From the NCBI GenBank assembly GCA_965235115.1, contig OZ249436.1:19034001-19098000 (forward strand): 64,000 nt of DNA, in the 5' to 3' direction. The notes below the pieces were generated by a model, which was not told the origin of the DNA, ran no database searches, and saw only the letters and a program-made list of their open reading frames with translations. The number at the start of each line of letters is the position of its first letter. Position 1 is the first letter of the stretch. Position numbers and translations under genes: made by a program. This DNA is from Laetmonice hystrix. Taxonomy: Eukaryota. Positions 231 through 64,000 of the stretch are shown here, one piece after another.

Positions 231-3200
231 AAATGGTGAAGCAAGCCTCCAAGGTGGACGGACAGAAGATCGGTGTTTCATCGTCCTAGATAATCAGCTA
301 CGCTTAAAAAATATTTGGTGCTCGAAACGTCAACTAGGAATCGAGTTCAGACGTCCGCGTATTTATACTGGTGAACTTCTGGGCCACCGTAGCATAGTTA
401 CCGGTGTTCTGATGGTAACCACTTTTCGCCGTCCGTGGTTCGCGTTATTTGAGGGCGTTTTAACGTCAACAGTGCCCTATAGGCAGGGAACCTTTCTCGC
501 GCTTGCCGATTGCTGATACACTGACAGCATCACTGTGACCCCACAGAGTCAAACCAAACGTGTATGTATAGTGTATAGGCCTACAAACATATCGATTGAG
601 GTTCTGGTAGGCTGTTTGACTTATTTACTCAAAACGTAAACTGGTAATTTGTCATAATTATGAGACTTTACTTTGTAAAAAAGCAGACACTATGTTAAGG
701 CTTCATGCCGTACCGAACTGAGACAAAGCCAAATATCGGTGAATGTAAGTTAGCAAATACTGCAGAATTCCACATAACCCACGACAAGCGAATTTGTCTT
801 ACGAGTTACCATGTCAACTTCCTTTATACTTCTATAATAGCATGAAACTTCACAAACTCTAATGACACAATGACTGTGGGGAAGATGTTCCAAACATGGC
901 CTTAGTAGACGGGACTTTTTTTTACTTGAGGATGGATACAGTATCTATTCGTCGGCTTACTGCGCTAGGTCCTTATCTAATACAATTATATGGTGGTCAA
1001 CGTTAGATATTCGACTATTGCACGGCTGGGAATGAGATGTCTCAGATAATCAAATTTAGAACTAGCCGGTTCGCAGGTGGCCGTGAATGTTATAAGAATA
1101 ATGTACGGTGTACTCGACACGGGGTAGGGCAGACTTTACAGCATCACGGAAAGGAACGAGATCACGCGAGATCACGCGAGGTCACGCGAGAGGAGCCAGC
1201 CCTGTGCAAACACGTGCGCGCGCATTCACTTCTTTAGAGATTCTTAGACGAGACGACAGATTTTAACCGTGGACGCGAGGGCAGAAAACCTTGTTTTGTT
1301 TACTCCAAAAATGTTCAGGTGCTAAAATTGTGTAAAGAAAGTAAAGTTTGATAGTAGCAACAGTACATCAATGACTGAATTAGCCGGCAGAAGCCTCACT
1401 TTCGTCCTGAGGCCTATTCTAAACGTTAAGTGGATATTTACGCAACATTTTCTTGGTGTATGTGAACGATTTAGCAACTCAGTTGTCTTAATTAAATTTC
1501 CCTAAGAATCACTAACGATAATTATACATCAGTTATGCAAACCACTTCAGACAAGCCCGCAATCTTGGCACCCTTACATGGACCACACGGGGACCAACCA
1601 TCCAAGTAGACCTTCACTGCGTACCTTTCCAACAAGGTCGCGGGGTCACACATACGGGTCTTCATACACAGACACAGGGGCGGTCAGGTCGCTCTTAGAG
1701 AAAGGAGGTAGAAACATGACAGAGCCCGCTCCATTAGGCTTGTCCCCTCCCATCAACATTCCATCGCGGATTACATGCCCCCGATATTTGATCTTGCTCC
1801 CTCGTGGTGCAGCGACCGCTCACCTTGGTTTCAGTACGTAAAGAAGGGCGCATGCGCAACGTATAGACTAGTAGCAACATCCGGTTCTGTGCCCAACCCC
1901 CAGGGGGAGCCACGGTATCGCGGCGTACAACGTCCAAATCAGGACCACGTGAAATTCGACTTACTGTTACGTCACAAACACTTGGTCTTTTACCATAGAA
2001 ACATGATCAAAACGCAGTCATTTAGACGACGTCTGTAGTTTCGAAGATGTATCTGACTGACTTTAGGGGCGCCCACACGCGGCGGTGGAGGGGTGCTAAA
2101 TGTATTTCGTCTGCGAGATTTTCTACGCTCAGTGAATAAAGGGAAAGAAGAAGAAGAAGAAAACGAGGAAGAGGAAGAAGAGGAAGAAATAAAACGCCAT
2201 TACAAGGCCTACTCCTACTGTGGATGACCCATGTCAACCAACTTCTAGTTATTTCGTTCGGGCAAATAGACGCCAGTGATTGCCGTGAATGACCCTCATT
2301 GGGTGGGTGTACAATCTACGGCTGTGATCGCGAGGTTACCAAGTATATTTAGGAATGAAACTGCCCTGACATTAAACCATAATTAAATCAGTCCCCCACC
2401 AGCCTGCAATCTGGTTACATTGCACGTTGATTGCTACATACGTAATAATGTGTAACCTGCGCAACGTCACACGTTGGAAATCTGACGCGGAAATCAATAA
2501 AAAAAACGGCGCCGCACGGAACTGCAGGAACGGCTCTGGCTCATCGGTGAAGAGGAAATATATATTACATATGTAAGGAATCCGTTGGTTACCACTGATA
2601 CAAAGAACCAAATCAAACATGTATGGAATATCTAGGCCCTGTGTATCGAACGCTGGATATCAAACTCCAGGTGATTCGGTCTGATGTAAGTATACTACCT
2701 GAAGGGAGGATTATTAAAGAATGTCAATGTAGACACAATAACACTGCTGAGAGGAAACTGTTTAATCTCCTTTCAAAAGTGTTGTCCTTCTAAATGATGC
2801 CTATATTATTTTTCATTAAAAGAAAAACAAATGTAAGTCTACCGTCATCTTTTTTTTTTCACTTTACTCTAATATTTGCTTGTTTTAGTATTTAGAGACG
2901 AGGGACGAGAAAGAGGGCAATAATTATGTATGGTAAGAACAAGCAATAAAAAAACCCAACGACGTAGAATGTCCTCATCGTCATTCCAGATATCCACAAG
3001 TCCCCGAGGAAAAGCACACTCGCTTCTTTTTCTGTATTATTTTATGTGGACTTGAGGAGAGAGATTTATCCGATTCTCCTTGGCCTGGCTGCTAGCATGT
3101 GTATAATGTATGCTCCGTATTGGACATGCAGATATAATTGGACATAGAACACGGAAGGACTTTTTTTCGGAATGACTGTATACCGGATGTGGAGGTGTCT

Positions 3201-3840: not shown

Positions 3841-4034
3841 GTATCTGCTCCACACGTTGGTCGTGAGCACTTGGTTCTTCTCGTCAAGGTCGAGGATTTG
3901 AATGAGAGCGAGGCCATAACTGACCCGCACTGTCTCGGAGGTATTATACACCGGCCGTCCCACGATTCCTACTCGCTCGTAGTTCTCTAACAAATGCTTG
4001 ATCAACCGCTTCTCGTCGGACATGGCGATACCAT
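3841..4034 (-). CDS. Internal exon of a nicotinic acetylcholine receptor (Cys-loop ligand-gated ion channel) subunit, start of the mature extracellular domain
   Basis: Translates as (D)GIAMSDEKRLIKHLLENYERVGIVGRPVYNTSETVRVSYGLALIQILDLDEKNQVLTTNVWSRY, with the nAChR hallmarks E-x-RL-x-x-x-L, RPV, L-x-QI-x-D-x-DEKNQ-x-LTTN-x-W. Acceptor ttacag|AT at 4035/4034 (phase 1, as expected after a signal-peptide exon); donor TAC|gtgagt at 3841/3840 (phase 0, the conserved intron position after TTNxWxxx). Length 194 = 2 + 64 codons. Confidence 0.95.
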
Positions 4035-4556: not shown

Positions 4557-7500
4557 CTCAACACATTGACCGTGATACTTACAGAGATAGGAATAGAATC
4601 AATGTAAGATATCACGTAACTACGTCAGCCTTTACTATAAACCAATACCCTCATGTTTCAATTTGACGTTGGAGCAGCATGTAATGTGACAATTGTATCT
4701 CACTGGCTCTCAAAGTAAGACGCCCTCCACCAGTTCTACTCGATCGTCCAAATCACCCTTCCATAGCATGCTCAAACCATGGGCCCACTTTAGCGAGGAT
4801 TATTCTCACAGAATGGTCAAAGCATGGGTCCACTTTACCGAGGATTATCCGATGAAAACCCCGGCCTCTACTTGAGGCAGTTCTTGACCTTCTTGTGAAT
4901 CACACACATATATAAGCGGTTGTCACGAAGTCATTCGATAGATCTATCAACCCAGACACACCAAAACCTACCCATAACCACGAGACGGCCGCATCAACCG
5001 GCTCATGAGATCTTTGATATCTATTTTAACGTCAACTCTATTTTAGTACCTCTAATTGCTGTAGATTGAACCACCAGTAGAACCTATAGAAATCCTCTCC
5101 GATGCAAACAAAGCTATTTTATTTTCTCTAGTGTAGATTTCAACCAGCCGAACACTCGGTATTTTATAGCCTGTCTGATGAAACTACTGCCTGATCTTAG
5201 AAATGTTAGTAAACCCATGTAGCCGTTGTATCAGATCCTGTTCGTTAAAATTCCAATGAAATGCGTTGGAATTTTAATGAATGAAAAGTCGCTACCGCTT
5301 TTGATATTTGTGGAAAATTAAGACTAACTTCATTACTTCCTGTTTCAGTCTCAATCTGCCTCCCTCTGTGTGTCTCCTACCAGAGCTATGTGACAACTTA
5401 CCAATATTCATCAGTATTGTGCAAAGTAACATCTTATAAATAACAGCCATCAGGATCAATTGGCCTCTCCATAGCAACACTGCAACTTATGGCACACGGA
5501 ATCCACTGTAGTACATGGCAGTACACTGTAGTACACTGTAGTAGAACGTAAATCCAGCCAGACAAGGCATTGAATGCGGTTGTGGCTGGCTCTGTTAGAG
5601 AATCACCAAAAAAACGGAGAGTGAGTGCTGACAATGTCTATAACAACGGAACGTTGAAGTAATCCTTTCTAAACGTTCAGCTCAAAGTTCACAACAGTCT
5701 GGGGCGAGTGGGTGATCAATCGTACTGTGTCCCAGGCACGTAATCCACACCGTCATTTGGCTCCAACAAACACCGCCATGAGAAAACTTAATTATCGCTA
5801 AGTAATAAATTCGTCCAATAATTATTGTCCAATCTGAGTACCGTGTAGAGGGTGAGTCAGGAGGAGAAGGGGTGGAGAGGGGTGGGGTGGGCCAGTTCAC
5901 CCCTTGGTAGGGTACCGAGGGTGAGAAGGATGGAGGGCGAGGACTGCGAATGACCGAAACATTCTACAATTTTAGTCACAGAACTAAATTCTCTTAAAAG
6001 TGAATACATGTCCAGATAAAATACAAATCTTCCGCAGATAAACTTCGGGACAACTGGCATTTTCCTGGACTTCGTGGACACACACATTTCTCCGTATTGA
6101 GATTGACAAATCATTAGTGTACTGTACAGTGTATAATTATAATTCTACAGACTGCCCAGTCATGACGTACTTCAGTAGTTGAGAGCCGTAGATATATGTA
6201 CATTATTTGGATGAAGTCTGACACGCGTCACTACCAGCCTTGTACACCCCCAGTGTAAGGGAATGGGCTGGTCGGATTAAACTCCCCCGAGATGTTGCGG
6301 GGAGGGCAGGGTAACCCATGGTAACGAGCCCCTGTCAATCACTCCAGTCTGGAAACCGAAATGGAAAGTAAATCATATCTGTCCAGATAAGTAATGAACT
6401 CGCCATGGCGCTTGGCGCCTGACCGGGAGGTGGGCCCAACCCCCCAACCCCCCTACAGGGACCATCCCCGACACGTGGGTTGGACGGGGGCCCGGGAACA
6501 CAGAGTCAAGTGGCCACGTGGGGAACACACGTGGGGTACACACGCGGGGCCCGACTCCCTACCACCAGGGGTCAGCCCTATGGCGGTCAGCGTCCGTGAC
6601 CTTGGACTGAATGAATAATAGACACCAACCACAGAGACCTACGTGATTATACGGGGGGGGGGGGGGGGTAGTACTGCATATTAATATAATAATAATATGT
6701 GGTAAGAGTTAATTTGGGACGTCGATCTCTCTACATCACGTGGGACGTTACTGGAGCCTCACTATGACAGGATTGAATCACGTGACTTGTTTGGTTATAC
6801 GTAATAAGGGGACGTTAAGGAGATTGAATCTGAGAGCGAGGCTGAGCGGTGAATGGTTCACTAGTTCAACTACTGGCCACGGTTACTGGGGAGAGATTCA
6901 CTAACTTGGCAGCCGCAAACACACACACACATTGCACAGCCAAACCGCCTTTTGTTTACCTAGAATACCAGGTGTTACACATCGACATGTATAATAGGTA
7001 CCCGACAATGTTTATATTACTGCCTCAGCCACCACGTCATCGCTTCACAACGTAATTTCAGAGACAGATGCTCTGCAGGATTCGCATCCGCTGCCTTTAC
7101 CCAAAGGGAGAAAAAAAGGCGCGCCGACGTTGTAAGACGAATGGTGCTAGTGTTCGCAGACATACTTTAGAAGTAATTACAAACGTTAGACGTCATATCT
7201 GACATGAAACCCTCATGATATAGTGACAGTGACATTCACAATAAGCTTCGTTCCCTGAAAACAAAAATCAAAGACCGTACCTACCCAAACGGGCCTCATA
7301 AAAGAAAAAGAAAAGAAAAAAATACATGACTTTCCTTTCGGCAAGATTGGAGTTAATAACAAGCTCCATTTATTCTGAGATAAAACAAGTTAATTTATCA
7401 AATCCAGTATGGCATTCATCCAAAATTCTGGATGAGAAGAAGAAAGGTCACAATGATTGACTTTTTAAATGTGAATTTTGACCATAATGACGTCATTATA

Positions 7501-31755: not shown

Positions 31756-32054
31756 CATACTTCACCCCCCCCCCCCCCCACTTACCTGTCCTATACCCTA
31801 GCGCATAACATTTCAAAGTCTAGACATCCCTATAATACTGAACGGGTCGGGGAGCAATGGATGGAACAGCCATGGGACCGTCTGAAATACTGACGCAACA
31901 GCTCAACATGTCCCATGTGACAGATACATGGCCTGGTTTTGATAGGGCTGTTCTGTTATCGGTTGTTACTCCCGACCAATGTAGTACCTTTTCGGACTTA
32001 GACAATTTTCGGCCACTTCGGGAATAGGACAGGTTAGTGGGGGATTAAGGTATG
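31756..32054. mobile_element. Older degenerate foldback MITE
   Basis: Terminal inverted repeats catacttcacc(c)nacttacctgtcctat / ataggacaggttagtgggggattaaggtatg; internal inverted pairs (ggtcggggagcaa / ttactcccgacc; catgggac / gtcccatg); TA on the right flank, GA on the left. Confidence 0.65.
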
Positions 32055-34386: not shown

Positions 34387-34618
34387 CACCACCCTATATC
34401 ACCCTATTTGACAACAATCACACGACATGCTCTGTACTATATGTTCATGAGACGTCAATCAATTTCGAAAGTAACGCCCCGTTTGGTTCTTTGTATGTCA
34501 CATAAAATGTTTCTTTTGACATCTGCATGTCAATACTCGCTATTTCCGGATGTTTCACGTAAAGATCGACCTTAAGGATACTACGGCATACACGTGCAAT
34601 TCTTCAAAGATACCTCAC

Positions 34619-34700
34619 CTGCAGTTTTTCTATGAGATCAGACTCACCAACATCATGAGGAGATACTCACCTGAAATGAAACAAACATAGTATAAGTTTA
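34619..34700 (-). promoter_or_regulatory. Candidate recursive splice site with 23- or 52-nt cryptic exon
   Basis: Minus strand: aaaCTTATactatgtttgtttcatttcAG|GTGAGTatctcctcatgatgttg|GTGAGTctgatctcatagaaaaactgcag|GTGAGG. AG at 34672-34671; donors start at 34670, 34647 and 34618; no other AG for about 55 nt upstream. Confidence 0.6.
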
Positions 34701-50223: not shown

Positions 50224-50367
50224 NNNNNNNNNNNNNNNNNNNNNNNNNNNNNNNNNNNNNNNNNNNNNNNNNNNNNNNNNNNNNNNNNNNNNNNNNNNNN
50301 NNNNNNNNNNNNNNNNNNNNNNNNNNNNNNNNNNNNNNNNNNNNNNNNNNNNNNNNNNNNNNNNNNN
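50224..50367. other. Assembly gap (144 N)
   Basis: Run of N. Confidence 1.
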
Positions 50368-58987: not shown

Positions 58988-59140
58988 NNNNNNNNNNNNN
59001 NNNNNNNNNNNNNNNNNNNNNNNNNNNNNNNNNNNNNNNNNNNNNNNNNNNNNNNNNNNNNNNNNNNNNNNNNNNNNNNNNNNNNNNNNNNNNNNNNNNN
59101 NNNNNNNNNNNNNNNNNNNNNNNNNNNNNNNNNNNNNNNA
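58988..59140. other. Assembly gap (153 N)
   Basis: Run of N. Confidence 1.
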
Positions 59141-60071: not shown

Positions 60072-60477
60072 TAGTGGTAAACGCCTGTGCCCCCGTCCCA
60101 TGCCCCTGATGGACACGAAAGGACGAGACACACGGGACCAATCGCAGCGCTTCACGTGGTTCAAATACACGTGGTTAGTGGTTGCGAATGACACTCACTG
60201 ACTGCCACTAAATCTGAACGATACAAGATCTAAAAACGAGCTACACTGGCCTGCTTGGTTTCAGGGCGAGGTGACTGATTGCTAACGCTCGCCTCACATC
60301 CAAGCTGCATAAGGAGATAATCCAGGGTTTGGAAACAACCAATGAACTGTATCACTGAGAAATCTAAATCGTGGTTAACGCCTGAGGTGGTCTTACCACA
60401 GAGTACCCTACACCTGTGGTCTTACCAAGGAAAGTATCCGTCTAATGAGGAGACGCTGTGCGGTGGGTACTCGGCTG

Positions 60478-60955
60478 GACGACCTGCTTACTGACGGCTA
60501 GCGGGATGACCTGCTTACTGACGGCTAGCGGGATGACCTGCTTACTGACGGTAGGCGGGATGACCTACTTACTGTCGGTAGGCGGGATGACCTGCTTACT
60601 GACGACAGGCGGGATGACCTGCTAACTGGCAGCGGGCGGGATGACCTGCTAACTGACGGCAGGCGGGATGACCTGCTAACTGGCAGCGGGCGGGATGACC
60701 TGCTAACTGACGGCAGGCGGGATGACCTGCTAACTGGCAGCGGGCGGGATGACCTGCTAACTGACGGCAGGCGGGATGACCTGCTAACTGACGGCAGGCG
60801 GGATGACCTGCTAACTGGCAGCGGGCGGGATGACCTGCTAACTGACGACAGGCGTTATGACCTGCTAACTGACGGCTAGCGGGATGACCTGCTAACTGAC
60901 GGCAGGCGTTATGAACTGCTAACTGACGGCAGGCGTCATGGCCTGCTTACTGACG
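60478..60955. repeat. Minisatellite, 27-bp unit x ~17 with two alternating variants
   Basis: ggcgggatgacctgctaact(gacggca/ggcagcg). Confidence 0.95.
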
Positions 60956-61037
60956 GGATATAACGTGTACTGTACGTACATCTGATGTTGTCGTCCAGAC
61001 ACACACTGCCCGCACATACACAAATGGAGGTTTCCCA

Positions 61038-61482: not shown

Positions 61483-61746
61483 TTAATTTGTTGTCTAGAG
61501 GCGCTGGCTTTATGAGCTTAACGACCATACCATGGATTCCTCCTAAAGCGTCTCATTCTTGGCACATAATCCTTTACTGCCCTTTTGCCTCACAATGGTT
61601 AGCAAACCCACTTCTGACGTCAGCAAGATGGACAATGGAGAACACTGTCCCAGAGTCTAACGTATCCAGAAACCAGACCCGAACATAAAGCAAGCCTGTT
61701 GGAAGGAGGCAGATCCTGAACGAGTAGAGTAAAAATGGTCACTTAC

Positions 61747-61815
61747 AGAACATCGTTCCACGAATGTACAACAAGGGAGCTCACTTACCTGAAACAAAGA
61801 AAATCATCATTAAGG
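61747..61815 (-). promoter_or_regulatory. Candidate recursive splice site (ratchet point) with 42-nt cryptic exon
   Basis: Minus strand: ccTTAATgatgattttctttgtttcAG|GTAAGTgagctcc...gatgttct|GTAAGT. AG at 61790-61789, first donor 61788-61783, second donor 61746-61741; branch-like A at about -22; no other AG for about 45 nt upstream. Confidence 0.6.
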
Positions 61816-64000
61816 ATCAAACATGATAAGCATTACTTCGTTTACAAATATACAAAAATAAAACTTGGAAACAATTATGTCTCAACATACTGCAATATTT
61901 TCTTCTAAACTGTGAAGATGTGTTTTATTCCACATTATCTAATTGTCATTATACACCATCAGTAAAAGATGTCGAGGACGGAATATCCCCCACCCACCCC
62001 CTCCAGGTGTACACCTAGCCCGGTCGGGGAGCCTCACCTGTCCGCCTATTGTATCCCAAGCTAATACATCTCCATAATAAACCCACCTGCTCCCCCCCCC
62101 GTGTTTTACCAGGTAACCAAGGAAACAATCCGTGTTCTACTGTCCGGATCAGGCCACGAACAGTAACCCCCTAAAATAGCCACATCTTATTCCCGATACT
62201 GGCTGCGGAGCGCCACCTATCGGCCCCATTTACCGATCAGTTTAGTCAGTTTCCTTTCTCTGTGCTAACTTACAGCATGCTCGCCTGCCAGTGGCCTCGG
62301 TCAGTCTGTCATAGTGGTGAACTACAGGCTTTGTTTGGGCGCGGTTTGCCTAGATCTGGCTTTACCGGGGGGGGGGGGGACATATTACACTCGCCGAATA
62401 CGAGCTTGTCGGCATGTATAGGTAGGTAGGTCAATATGTCCTCTCTATACATGTATATGTCCTCTCTATCGGAAAGAGACGTTTGTATGTGGGTCAAACA
62501 AACTCTCGATTTCATGACTAATTTGGCGTTAAACATGTCGAACTTGTTCAGGCGGCTTCAGTGGACATTGCGGATTATCACCTGACACCAATTAAATAAG
62601 TCATTAGCCTCCAGAGGAGAGGACGCATGGACGTTTTTTTTTTTAATTGATGTGGGGAACTATCTTCTGTGCGAATGTACACAACAGCGCGGGCCAACAC
62701 GGTATTCAAAGGAATAACCGAAGAACCGCCATATCTGTGTAGAAGGTATCGCCTTTTATAAAGAAGAACGGTTGTGTCATACTAAGAGGTCAAACAGTCG
62801 TAGCAATTGTTTGTACTGCACGGAAACTGTGACTTTTCCTGAGCAGACTCAATTTTCAGTCACGTTTTGCGCAATGACGCCGAGATTCAAATATCTAAAT
62901 GGAATTAAATGGATTTTAAATGGAAATTTCATCGTATCAAACTCCCAAACATCTGTCCTTGGTAAGCTTTTACTGATTTAAGAGGAATATACAGCTATTT
63001 TACCATCTTAATAGTAGGCTAGTTTGAGTTTAAATGATGAAAACAAAAACTTTACGGACTATAATCCCATGATAATGTACAAAACACAATATACATGTTT
63101 ATCTGAAAGAAATGTGTGTATTCTGTTTAGTACACTTAAAGACCTGTTTTAACCTACATGTAGATACCCATCATTCCCTTCATATCACTTTTCGGAGCCA
63201 GACCATATAGCAGGATGCCTTAGTGACCCATACAACTGAAAAGGGATCGTACTAATAATTTCTTATGTTAGATACATAGAAAGAGTCCTATGCACACGAA
63301 AGGATTTAATTTTATTCCATTATTTATTTATTACCCACTATTATGACCAGTTGACGACGTTTCGTGAGAATCGACCATATATTCACCCATATAAGTGTTG
63401 AATGGAGAAAGACTGTCGTGATTAATCACCGTGGCTGTAGAAGAAAACCTCCAGAATTATCTTCCCTGAGTATGACCGCAATAAACTATACCATGACTGC
63501 AATTATATTCAATTTCCATCAATCTAGGCGCATTAGTTTGTGTGACAGAGAACCGAGCCTTGATGGTGAAGAACACGGCCCCACGGGCGCAGACGACGGG
63601 ATTCTATCAGCACTGAAAGAAGTGAACCTCAACCTAGCGGTCTTCATCTATCAACGATTAGATCTCCATGGCGACAGTTCCGGAAACACGTGACGTCTGA
63701 GGTCCGCCATCGACTACAAATACCATCCTGGCCCGCCATATAGAGGCCAATACAGTAAGACACATCAAAGCCCCCAATGTTGGCAGTCACTCCTTGGTTC
63801 CTATATATAGACAAACATATTTTGAGTCATGAGACATCAGTTGGAACTGATATAGTTTATAAGAGCTAGAATTTATCAAATAATCCACCAGCTAGCGCGG
63901 TGTAGGCCTACAACTATGACGTATGTTAACATCGTCTTGGTTTCTAACGTAAAAAAAGACGCTGGTAACCATCAACATGAAACGTCACGTCCGACGTGTG

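What the first reader, a model, noticed from the sequence alone, without database searches (positions are those of the whole stretch)
61741..61815. Strong AG|GTAAGT site with a 42-nt cryptic exon closed by a second GTAAGT
Minus strand TTAAT...ttttctttgtttcAG|GTAAGT, then 42 nt, then |GTAAGT. Two canonical GTAAGT donors and a strong acceptor fall within about 70 nt. The cryptic exon has stops in phases 1 and 2 (xGT AAG TGA; xxG TAA) and reads VSELPCCTFVERCS in phase 0. If the host intron is phase 1, inclusion would be a poison event, as is common for vertebrate RS-exons.
Basis: partly seen in the sequence, partly recalled or inferred. Interest (0 to 1): 0.7.

Follow-up and report, generated by a model that had tools for sequence, protein, structure and literature searches.

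The report
Probable recursive splice site upstream of nAChR
Upstream of a worm's nicotinic receptor gene, an intron-end signal sits directly against an intron-start signal and is followed by a 42-base decoy exon; it is probably one of three stepping stones for removing a very long intron in pieces, as flies do, but no RNA data exist to prove it.

Summary
The motif is real. On the minus strand a TTAAT branch-point-like motif, a 13-nt pyrimidine tract and CAG abut GTAAGT at 61789|61788. Forty-two nt later comes a second GTAAGT (61746-61741). The stretch is single-copy.

Within the 64-kb window the sub-motifs are near chance. The composite is not:
- Of 52 non-satellite sites matching a strict Y8-N-CAG|GTAAGT pattern (ours, with one G in its tract, does not match it), 11 have a second GTRAGT 25-60 nt downstream, against 1 at 61-90 nt, 0 at 91-120 nt and about 0.9 expected per bin.
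- The looser pattern containing this site is about 5-fold above matched controls.
- In 233 kb around the window only three sites reach this strength (34671, 61789 and window-equivalent 155692). All are on the minus strand and all are followed by a donor 23-52 nt downstream.

They lie upstream of, and on the same strand as, a nicotinic acetylcholine receptor gene (exon 2 at 4034-3841).

Best reading (about 0.68): a fly-type ratchet point with a cryptic RS-exon in a long 5' intron of an annelid-like worm.

The vertebrate "poison exon" reading is unproven, because a probable start-codon exon at 5450-5402 would put the site in a 5'-UTR intron.

No RNA runs, annotation or relatives were available. 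This scan found the same kind of site before in other introns of this genome. It is a new member of a known kind.

The parts
61809..61813 (-). Branch-point-like TTAAT (fits yUnAy); its branch A lies 21 nt before the last G of the acceptor AG
   Evidence: Read directly from the sequence. Unchanged in the DNA contigs of runs X1-X3.
61791..61803 (-). Pyrimidine tract ttttctttgtttc (12 of 13 Y), with TT at positions -5/-6
   Evidence: TT at -5/-6 is reported for 99.5% of Drosophila ratchet points (10.1101/006163).
61783..61790 (-). Juxtaposed acceptor and donor, AG|GTAAGT, with the junction between 61789 and 61788. With the preceding C it is CAGGTAAGT, the full 9-nt U1-complementary consensus (from my own knowledge).
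   Evidence: Second-highest combined 3'ss+5'ss score (8.05) in 233 kb on both strands.
61747..61788 (-). 42-nt putative cryptic RS-exon. It has stops in phases 1 and 2, is open in phase 0, and contains one ATG.
   Evidence: Its length falls within the 38-60 nt range of the 11 strict-pattern sites genome-wide that have a second donor.
61741..61746 (-). Second donor, TCT|GTAAGTGA, which would define the RS-exon. Its intronic part GTAAGTGA is identical to that of the ratchet donor; its exonic part TCT does not match CAG.
   Evidence: A second GTRAGT is enriched specifically at spacers of 25-60 nt: 11 against 1 and 0 in the further bins.
34613..34700 (-). Second ratchet-like site of the same series: tgtttgtttcatttcag|GTGAGT, with the G of AG at 34671 and donors at +23 and +52
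   Evidence: score 7.1. It lies 27.1 kb downstream of the 61789 site on the minus strand.
5402..5450 (-). Candidate start-codon/signal-peptide exon of the receptor gene (MAVIYKMLLCTILMNI plus 1 base), with donor TTG|GTAAGT in phase 1
   Evidence: It joins in frame to exon 2, giving MAVIYKMLLCTILMNIDGIAMSDEKRLIK... This is an inference from a heuristic scan; it was the best donor among 19 candidates in 160 kb.
3841..4034 (-). Exon 2 of a nicotinic acetylcholine receptor subunit gene, with a phase-1 acceptor ttacag|AT. It is the first recognisable coding exon downstream of the site on the same strand.
   Evidence: tblastn of full-length homologues gave 46-58% identity here; sequence. Further exons of the gene lie below the window start.

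Best explanation
The site is a fly-type intronic recursive splice site (ratchet point) with a cryptic 42-nt RS-exon. It is the middle one of three such sites on the minus strand, at window-equivalent 155692, 61789 and 34671. These would subdivide a very long 5' intron of a transcript that runs into the nicotinic acetylcholine receptor gene, whose start-codon exon is probably at 5450-5402 and whose exon 2 is at 4034-3841.

The proposed mechanism is inferred from the Drosophila model (Joseph et al. 2018 as described in PMC8605326).
1. The acceptor at 61789 and the downstream donor at 61746 define the 42-nt exon.
2. The upstream exon, or the previous ratchet product, is spliced to 61788. This regenerates a strong donor, xxx|GTAAGTGA.
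3. The regenerated donor out-competes the RS-exon's own donor (TCT|GTAAGTGA).
4. The 42 nt and the next 27 kb are then removed together by splicing to the acceptor at 34671. There the cycle repeats, until the last step reaches the receptor gene's coding exons.

Shown here: the sequence anatomy, the genome-wide and local excess of this architecture, and the strand agreement with the receptor gene.

Inferred: transcription across the site, use of the site, and the identity of the host transcript.
For: 1. Anatomy. All signals are present and strong: a branch-like TTAAT, 12 of 13 Y in the tract with TT at -5/-6, CAG|GTAAGT, and a second GTAAGT at +42.

2. The architecture is a real feature of this genome. 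The strict pattern Y8-N-CAG|GTAAGT (which this site, with a G at -7, does not itself match) occurs 67 times, 52 of them outside one satellite, against 26 for the reversed control. Of the 52, 11 have GTRAGT at a spacer of 25-60 nt, 1 at 61-90 nt and 0 at 91-120 nt, against about 0.9 expected per bin.

3. The looser pattern that contains this site has about 22-26 unique hits. Two matched controls give 4-5 each: second donor reversed and purine tract in place of pyrimidine. See for the pattern itself.

4. Strict sites cluster on one strand. Three pairs lie within 100 kb of each other, all same-strand, against 0.42 pairs expected (my count).

5. Local series. In 233 kb, the three best combined acceptor+donor scores (8.4, 8.05, 7.1; next 5.75) are all on the minus strand. 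Each has a donor 23-52 nt downstream. Simulations give 0.25 such sites and none with a donor.

6. The three sites share only the signals, so they are not copies of a repeat.

7. Context. They lie on the same strand as, and 30-150 kb upstream of, a neuronal-type receptor gene. No ORF of 70 aa or more between 4.2 and 64 kb looked coding by eye. Ten long ORFs between 93 and 160 kb gave no Pfam hit. The segment lengths of 27 and 29 kb fall inside the Drosophila range of 2.6-63.6 kb.
Against: No RNA evidence of any kind: no RNA run holds the stretch.

The genome has no annotation on record, and no own-genome protein was found; the best hit was 79.6% identical.

No related genome could be compared, so conservation is untested.

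The transcription start and upstream exon are unknown. A probable start-codon exon at 5450 could itself be a first exon, which would leave the three sites outside that gene's main transcript.

The 94-kb gap between 155692 and 61789 is longer than any Drosophila recursive segment.

Strand-asymmetry tests (AT skew, poly(A) signals, U1-like sites) were uninformative.

About one in five sites of this class is expected by chance. My local score threshold was set after seeing the data.
Confidence: 0.68

Rival explanations
1. It is a conventional or 'expressed' RS-exon. The 42 nt would be a real, at least sometimes included, alternative exon of the receptor gene's 5' region or of an unannotated minus-strand transcript. 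That could be a 5'-UTR cassette adding an upstream ATG or, if the host intron is the phase-1 intron before exon 2, a premature-stop 'poison' cassette.
For: The same anatomy serves expressed RS-exons in flies and mammals (PMC8605326; PMC6224609). The two donors have identical intronic parts (GTAAGTGA), so the outcome depends on exonic context and the unknown upstream exon. The exon 2 acceptor is phase 1, and phase 1 gives xGT AAG TGA. The 42 nt contains an ATG.
Against: The RS-exon donor has a non-consensus exonic side (TCT). In flies, cryptic RS-exons at intronic ratchet points are inevitably skipped. A probable start-codon exon lies between the site and exon 2, which would make phase irrelevant. 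The phase-0 peptide has no recognisable meaning. No transcript data exist.
Confidence: 0.15
2. It is a chance juxtaposition of splice-like signals in untranscribed intergenic DNA or in an intron, and is never used.
For: Sub-motifs in the window are near chance. Matched genome-wide controls still give 4-5 composite sites against about 22-26 real ones, so roughly a fifth of the class is chance. The scan read many windows, so one chance composite could be met. Host transcription is unproven.
Against: Three outlier sites lie on one strand within 121 kb, each with a short downstream donor, against 0.25 expected and 0 with a donor. The second donor is enriched at a specific distance genome-wide. The strand agrees with the only nearby gene.
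Confidence: 0.12
3. The signals belong to a repeat or mobile element that happens to carry an acceptor-donor-like unit, as several satellites in this genome do.
For: Satellites with CAGGTAAGT or TAG|GTAAGT units exist at C12:26.31 Mb, C1:0.25 Mb, window 31780, and the array at window-equivalent -16.7 to -16.0 kb.
Against: The 800-nt context of the site is single-copy. No tandem repeat covers it. The three local sites share only the signals.
Confidence: 0.02

Closest known systems
Drosophila intronic ratchet points with cryptic RS-exons (Ubx, kuz, Bx, luna; Duff et al., bioRxiv 10.1101/006163; Joseph et al. 2018 as described in PMC8605326; Pai et al., PMC6110457)
   Same: It has the (Y)n-CAG|GTAAGT juxtaposition and TT at -5/-6. 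A short cryptic exon is closed by a second donor. It has stops in two of three frames, in line with the general non-coding nature of fly cryptic RS-exons. Several same-strand sites lie tens of kb apart, in a large region with no recognisable coding sequence next to a neuronal-type gene.
   Different: The host is an annelid-like spiralian, not an insect. The host intron, its upstream exon and use of the site are not demonstrated. Conservation is untested. One inter-site gap (94 kb) exceeds the fly maximum of 63.6 kb. The two competing donors are identical in their intronic halves.
Vertebrate recursive splice sites with RS-exons in long neuronal genes (Sibley et al. 2015 as cited in PMC8605326; Blazquez et al., PMC6224609)
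   Same: The logic is exon definition through a downstream donor, followed by competition between the regenerated donor and the RS-exon donor. Inclusion could introduce a premature stop if the intron is coding and phase 1.
   Different: The animal is not a vertebrate. The phase of the host intron is unknown and it is probably a 5'-UTR intron. Nothing shows promoter-dependent inclusion or decay of the included form.
Other predicted ratchet points found by this scan in the same genome (ephrin, Eph, dachsous, PLC-beta, srGAP, TCF and RBMS/shep introns)
   Same: The architecture is the same, in the same genome, in sense-strand series within very long introns. RNA proof is equally lacking.
   Different: In those cases the host intron is bounded by recognised coding exons. 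Here only the downstream gene is recognised and the upstream exon is unknown.

Membership tests
Intronic recursive splice site / ratchet point with cryptic RS-exon (Drosophila type) | A 3' splice site directly abutting a 5' splice site: pyrimidine tract, YAG|GTRAGT | tested here: met
   ttttctttgtttcag|GTAAGT at 61803-61783 on the minus strand. Combined score 8.05, the second of all AG|GT sites in 233 kb.
Intronic recursive splice site / ratchet point with cryptic RS-exon (Drosophila type) | A prominent pyrimidine tract with TT at -5/-6 (99.5% of fly ratchet points) | tested here: met
   Positions -6 and -5 are T, T. Twelve of the 13 bases before AG are pyrimidines. The two sister sites also have TT at -5/-6.
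Intronic recursive splice site / ratchet point with cryptic RS-exon (Drosophila type) | A downstream donor that defines a short cryptic RS-exon | tested here: met
   GTAAGT at +42. Genome-wide, a second GTRAGT follows 11 of 52 strict sites at a spacer of 25-60 nt, against 1 at 61-90 nt and 0 at 91-120 nt.
Intronic recursive splice site / ratchet point with cryptic RS-exon (Drosophila type) | Location inside a long intron (over about 10 kb), on the sense strand of the host gene | tested here: inconclusive
   The site is on the same strand as the receptor gene, 56-58 kb upstream of its first recognisable exons. No coding-looking ORF lies between them. No upstream exon, annotation or RNA is available.
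Intronic recursive splice site / ratchet point with cryptic RS-exon (Drosophila type) | The regenerated ratchet donor is stronger than the RS-exon donor, so that the cryptic exon is skipped | tested here: inconclusive
   The intronic halves are identical (GTAAGTGA). The RS-exon donor's exonic half is TCT, 0 of 3 matches to CAG. The regenerated donor's exonic half depends on the unknown upstream exon.
Intronic recursive splice site / ratchet point with cryptic RS-exon (Drosophila type) | RNA intermediates: exon-to-ratchet junction reads, sawtooth read density, recursive lariats | not testable with these tools
   No RNA run holds the stretch. The three holders are DNA-like contig sets from one sample, with even depth and no joints.
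Intronic recursive splice site / ratchet point with cryptic RS-exon (Drosophila type) | The core is conserved across species while the flanks decay | not testable with these tools
   The genome has no relatives in the searchable collections (header). In the one sample's DNA-run contigs, which differ from the assembly, the core is unchanged while 61807 and 61820 differ; this has no statistical power.
Vertebrate poison RS-exon (inclusion triggers nonsense-mediated decay) | Inclusion puts a premature stop into the reading frame of the host mRNA | tested here: inconclusive
   The stops in phases 1 and 2 are confirmed, and the exon 2 acceptor is phase 1. But a probable start-codon exon at 5450-5402 lies downstream of the site, so the host intron is probably non-coding.
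Vertebrate poison RS-exon (inclusion triggers nonsense-mediated decay) | A vertebrate host with a long neuronal gene | tested here: not met
   The neighbouring receptor gene's closest proteins come from annelids, a nemertean and molluscs, at 68-80% identity in the large exon. Earlier notes of the scan also call the genome a marine worm.

The most novel reading that the evidence does not exclude
Zero-nucleotide recursive splicing through short cryptic RS-exons operates in annelids. Together with flies and vertebrates, that would make this way of removing long introns ancestral to bilaterians. Here it would cut a 5' intron of 150 kb or more in a nicotinic receptor gene into at least four pieces. 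The RS-exon length in this genome would be tightly set at about 40-60 nt.
Probability: 0.6. Interest if true: 0.55.

Novelty: new member of a known kind. Interest (0 to 1): 0.4.

Why it matters
Recursive splicing has been shown experimentally in insects and vertebrates. The paper library held no meaningful report for annelids: the only paper with both terms is unrelated.

If the sites are used, this locus and its sister sites show that the exon-definition form of recursive splicing exists in the third great branch of bilaterians. They also give a compact sequence rule for finding such sites: pyrimidine tract with TT at -5/-6, CAG|GTAAGT, and a second donor 25-60 nt on.

For annotation, the site predicts that the receptor gene has a distant upstream promoter and non-coding first exon that ordinary gene finders would miss. 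The 42-nt unit should not be annotated as a coding micro-exon.

On its own it is one more predicted site of a kind this scan has already met several times in this genome, so its individual weight is modest.

Tried and rejected
- **RNA evidence.** The look-up of sequencing runs returned only three DNA-like contig sets from one sample. Laying them confirmed the DNA but showed no joints and cannot speak to expression.
- **Annotation.** A profile-free search of 1.84 billion representatives, and a word-indexed search with the best full-length homologue, found no protein of this genome; the best was 79.6% identical, from Owenia. The Owenia orthologue's locus was withheld; only a 48,395-base figure was returned.
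- **Upstream coding sequence.** Ten long ORFs between 93 and 160 kb gave no Pfam family. Rfam found nothing at 59.2-64 kb.
- **Transcription direction from composition.** AT/GC skew, poly(A) signal counts and U1-like site counts per strand were dominated by repeats and were uninformative.
- **CpG peaks as promoter marks.** The peak at 155-157 kb is a CG-rich tandem repeat, not an island.
- **The other CAGGTAAGT, at 31780.** Rejected as a ratchet point: it has no pyrimidine tract and is a unit of a GGGGATAGGACAGGTAAGT satellite.
- **The bare pattern CAGGTAAGT-N25-60-GTAAGT.** Uninformative genome-wide (729 against 603 for the control), because satellites dominate it.
- **A repeat origin for the site.** Rejected.
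- **Masked stretches.** The N runs at 50224-50367 and 58988-59139 were left alone.

Full report
**What is there**

On the minus strand the window reads, 5' to 3':
- a branch-point-like TTAAT at 61813-61809;
- a pyrimidine tract ttttctttgtttc at 61803-61791;
- AG at 61790-61789, directly followed by GTAAGT at 61788-61783;
- a second GTAAGT at 61746-61741, 42 nt after the junction.

The 800-nt context is single-copy in the 627-Mb genome. Only a GAG-type simple repeat at 61374-61480 matches elsewhere. Contigs of three DNA runs from one sample carry the same core. They differ nearby only at 61807 (T>G on the plus strand, position -19 from the junction) and 61820, both outside every signal. Rfam finds nothing in 59.2-64 kb.

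**Is it more than chance?**

Inside the 64-kb window the pieces taken singly are not remarkable.
- CAGGTAAGT occurs 2 times against 0.52 expected.
- Two GTAAGT 30-60 nt apart occur once against 0.27 expected.
- The other CAGGTAAGT, at 31780, is a satellite unit without a pyrimidine tract.

The composite had to be judged against the whole genome.

A strict pattern, eight pyrimidines-N-CAG|GTAAGT (which this site does not itself match, because of the G at -7), occurs 67 times. Fifty-two of these lie outside one satellite on contig 12. The same pattern read backwards occurs 26 times.

Of those 52, 11 have a GTRAGT at a spacer of 25-60 nt, 1 at 61-90 nt and none at 91-120 nt. Base composition predicts about 0.9 per bin. 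The implied cryptic exons are 38-60 nt long; this site's is 42.

A looser pattern that includes this site (YYYNYYYY-AG|GTAAGT, 25-60 nt, GTRAGT) has about 22-26 unique non-satellite hits. Two matched controls each give 4-5 unique hits: one with the second donor reversed and one with a purine tract in place of the pyrimidine tract. That is an excess of about five-fold, so roughly four in five sites of this class are not chance.

The 52 strict sites also cluster. Three pairs lie within 100 kb of each other, all on the same strand, against 0.42 pairs expected (my count).

My controls give a smaller figure in the same direction.

**The local picture**

I assembled 234 kb around the window. I scored every AG|GT on both strands for a combined acceptor and donor. 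After removing one satellite, three sites stand apart (scores 8.4, 8.05, 7.1; the next is 5.75):
- window-equivalent 155692 (L020:1692);
- 61789;
- 34671.

All three are on the minus strand. Each has a branch-like yUnAy motif and TT at -5/-6. Each, and only a few of the lower-ranked sites, is followed by a GTRAG donor 23-52 nt downstream.

Second-order Markov simulations of the same 233 kb give 0.25 sites of that strength per both strands, and none with such a donor in 60 runs. The reversed sequences give one, without a donor. The threshold was chosen after seeing the scores, but the gap is wide.

The three contexts share nothing beyond the signals, so they are independent sites and not copies.

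**Host**

The only recognisable gene nearby is a nicotinic acetylcholine receptor subunit gene on the minus strand.
- Its exon 2 is at 4034-3841, with a phase-1 acceptor.
- Its remaining exons lie below the window start.
- A second paralogue lies further down.

The signal peptide is not in exon 2. A heuristic scan for ATG-hydrophobic-phase-1-donor units found its best candidate 1.4 kb upstream, at 5450-5402 (donor TTG|GTAAGT). Spliced to exon 2, it gives MAVIYKMLLCTILMNIDGIAMSDEKRLIK....

No ORF of 70 aa or more between 4.2 and 64 kb looked coding by eye, and ten long ORFs between 93 and 160 kb have no Pfam hit.

So the three sites lie 29, 56 and 150 kb upstream of the probable start-codon exon, on its strand, in a region with no recognisable coding sequence. 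The simplest reading is a distant non-coding first exon and a 5'-UTR intron of 150 kb or more, removed in steps of ?, 94, 27 and 29 kb.

This part is inference. No RNA run holds the stretch. No protein of this genome is on record. The orthologue's locus in Owenia was withheld. Compositional strand tests were uninformative. More flanking sequence could not be fetched.

**Mechanism proposed**

The model follows Drosophila (Joseph et al. 2018 as described in PMC8605326; Duff et al., 10.1101/006163).
1. The acceptor at 61789 and the donor at 61746 define the 42-nt exon.
2. The upstream exon is joined to 61788, which regenerates a donor with the intronic half GTAAGTGA.
3. That donor competes with the RS-exon's donor. 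The intronic halves are identical, but the RS-exon donor's exonic half (TCT) is poor.
4. The regenerated donor should therefore win. The 42 nt would leave with the next 27 kb, when splicing proceeds to the acceptor at 34671.

That holds only if the start-codon exon lies upstream of all three sites, which the candidate at 5450 argues against. In a 5'-UTR intron, inclusion would merely add 42 nt with one ATG.

**Comparison and novelty**

The site meets the three sequence-level criteria of fly ratchet points: the juxtaposed signals, TT at -5/-6 with a strong tract, and a short cryptic exon with a second donor.

The criteria that make a ratchet point proven could not be tested or are inconclusive. 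These are location in a defined long intron, RNA intermediates and conservation.

The organism is an annelid-like spiralian, not a vertebrate. The library holds no meaningful report of recursive splicing in annelids.

This scan has already found the same architecture in other long introns of this genome: ephrin, Eph, dachsous, PLC-beta, srGAP, TCF and RBMS/shep. This is therefore a further member of a known kind, not a new kind.

**Verdict**

- Best explanation: a fly-type ratchet point, second of a three-site minus-strand series upstream of a receptor gene. Confidence 0.68.
- Included or 'expressed' RS-exon: 0.15.
- Chance: 0.12.
- Repeat-borne: 0.02.
- Interest: 0.4.

Noticed in passing
window 34613-34700 (minus strand): A second ratchet-like site, tgtttgtttcatttcag|GTGAGT, with further donors at +23 and +52. 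Together with 61789 it forms an evenly spaced pair, 27.1 kb apart and 29 kb from the probable start-codon exon.
   Followed up: partly
L020:1636-1720 (window-equivalent about 155,636-155,720, minus strand): A third and strongest ratchet-like site, ctctattattctctttgcag|GTAAGT, with a 50-nt unit closed by CAG|GTGAGT and a CTAAT branch-like motif upstream. It lies 94 kb upstream of the 61789 site on the same strand.
   Followed up: partly
window 3841-4034 and 5402-5450 (minus strand): Exon 2 of a nicotinic acetylcholine receptor subunit gene, and a candidate start-codon/signal-peptide exon 1.4 kb upstream. The rest of the gene lies below the window start (L021).
   Followed up: partly
L021:4501-4590 and L021:4807-4896 (window-equivalent -5499..-5410 and -5193..-5104, minus strand): Two tandem versions of the same 30-codon receptor exon (homologue residues 267-296). 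They look like mutually exclusive alternative exons. The downstream paralogue has a similar pair at window-equivalent -17588..-17466 and -18602..-18468.
   Followed up: no
L012 and L021 (window-equivalent -20.9 to -14.1 kb): A second receptor paralogue lies in tandem on the same strand. No equivalent of exon 2 (homologue residues about 15-78) was detected for it between -8 and -14 kb. It may share upstream exons with the first gene, or its exon may have diverged.
   Followed up: no
L012:3253-4030 (window-equivalent -16747..-15970, minus strand): A tandem array of 36/58-nt units, each containing cccttatag|GTAAGTTA. It is a satellite that mimics recursive sites inside the paralogue's intron, and it must be masked in any motif count.
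   Followed up: partly
G000:C12:26313499-26316377: A roughly 37-nt satellite with CTTCCCCCAG|GTAAGT units. It accounts for 15 of the 67 strict-pattern hits and most of the relaxed-pattern hits, so it confounds genome-wide counts of ratchet-like motifs.
   Followed up: partly
window 60473-60956: A 27-nt tandem repeat of 17.9 copies with 87% matches, 0.8 kb downstream of the site on the minus strand. Contigs of the DNA runs break there.
   Followed up: no
window 61807 and 61820: All three DNA runs read G for T at 61807 and T for A at 61820 (plus strand). They also show several small indels at 62092-62418. The assembly and the run contigs therefore represent different haplotypes or individuals. 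The ratchet core itself is identical.
   Followed up: partly
window 62581-62741: The summed contig depth in the DNA runs jumps from about 50 to 1700-3100, which indicates a high-copy repeat about 0.8 kb upstream of the site.
   Followed up: no
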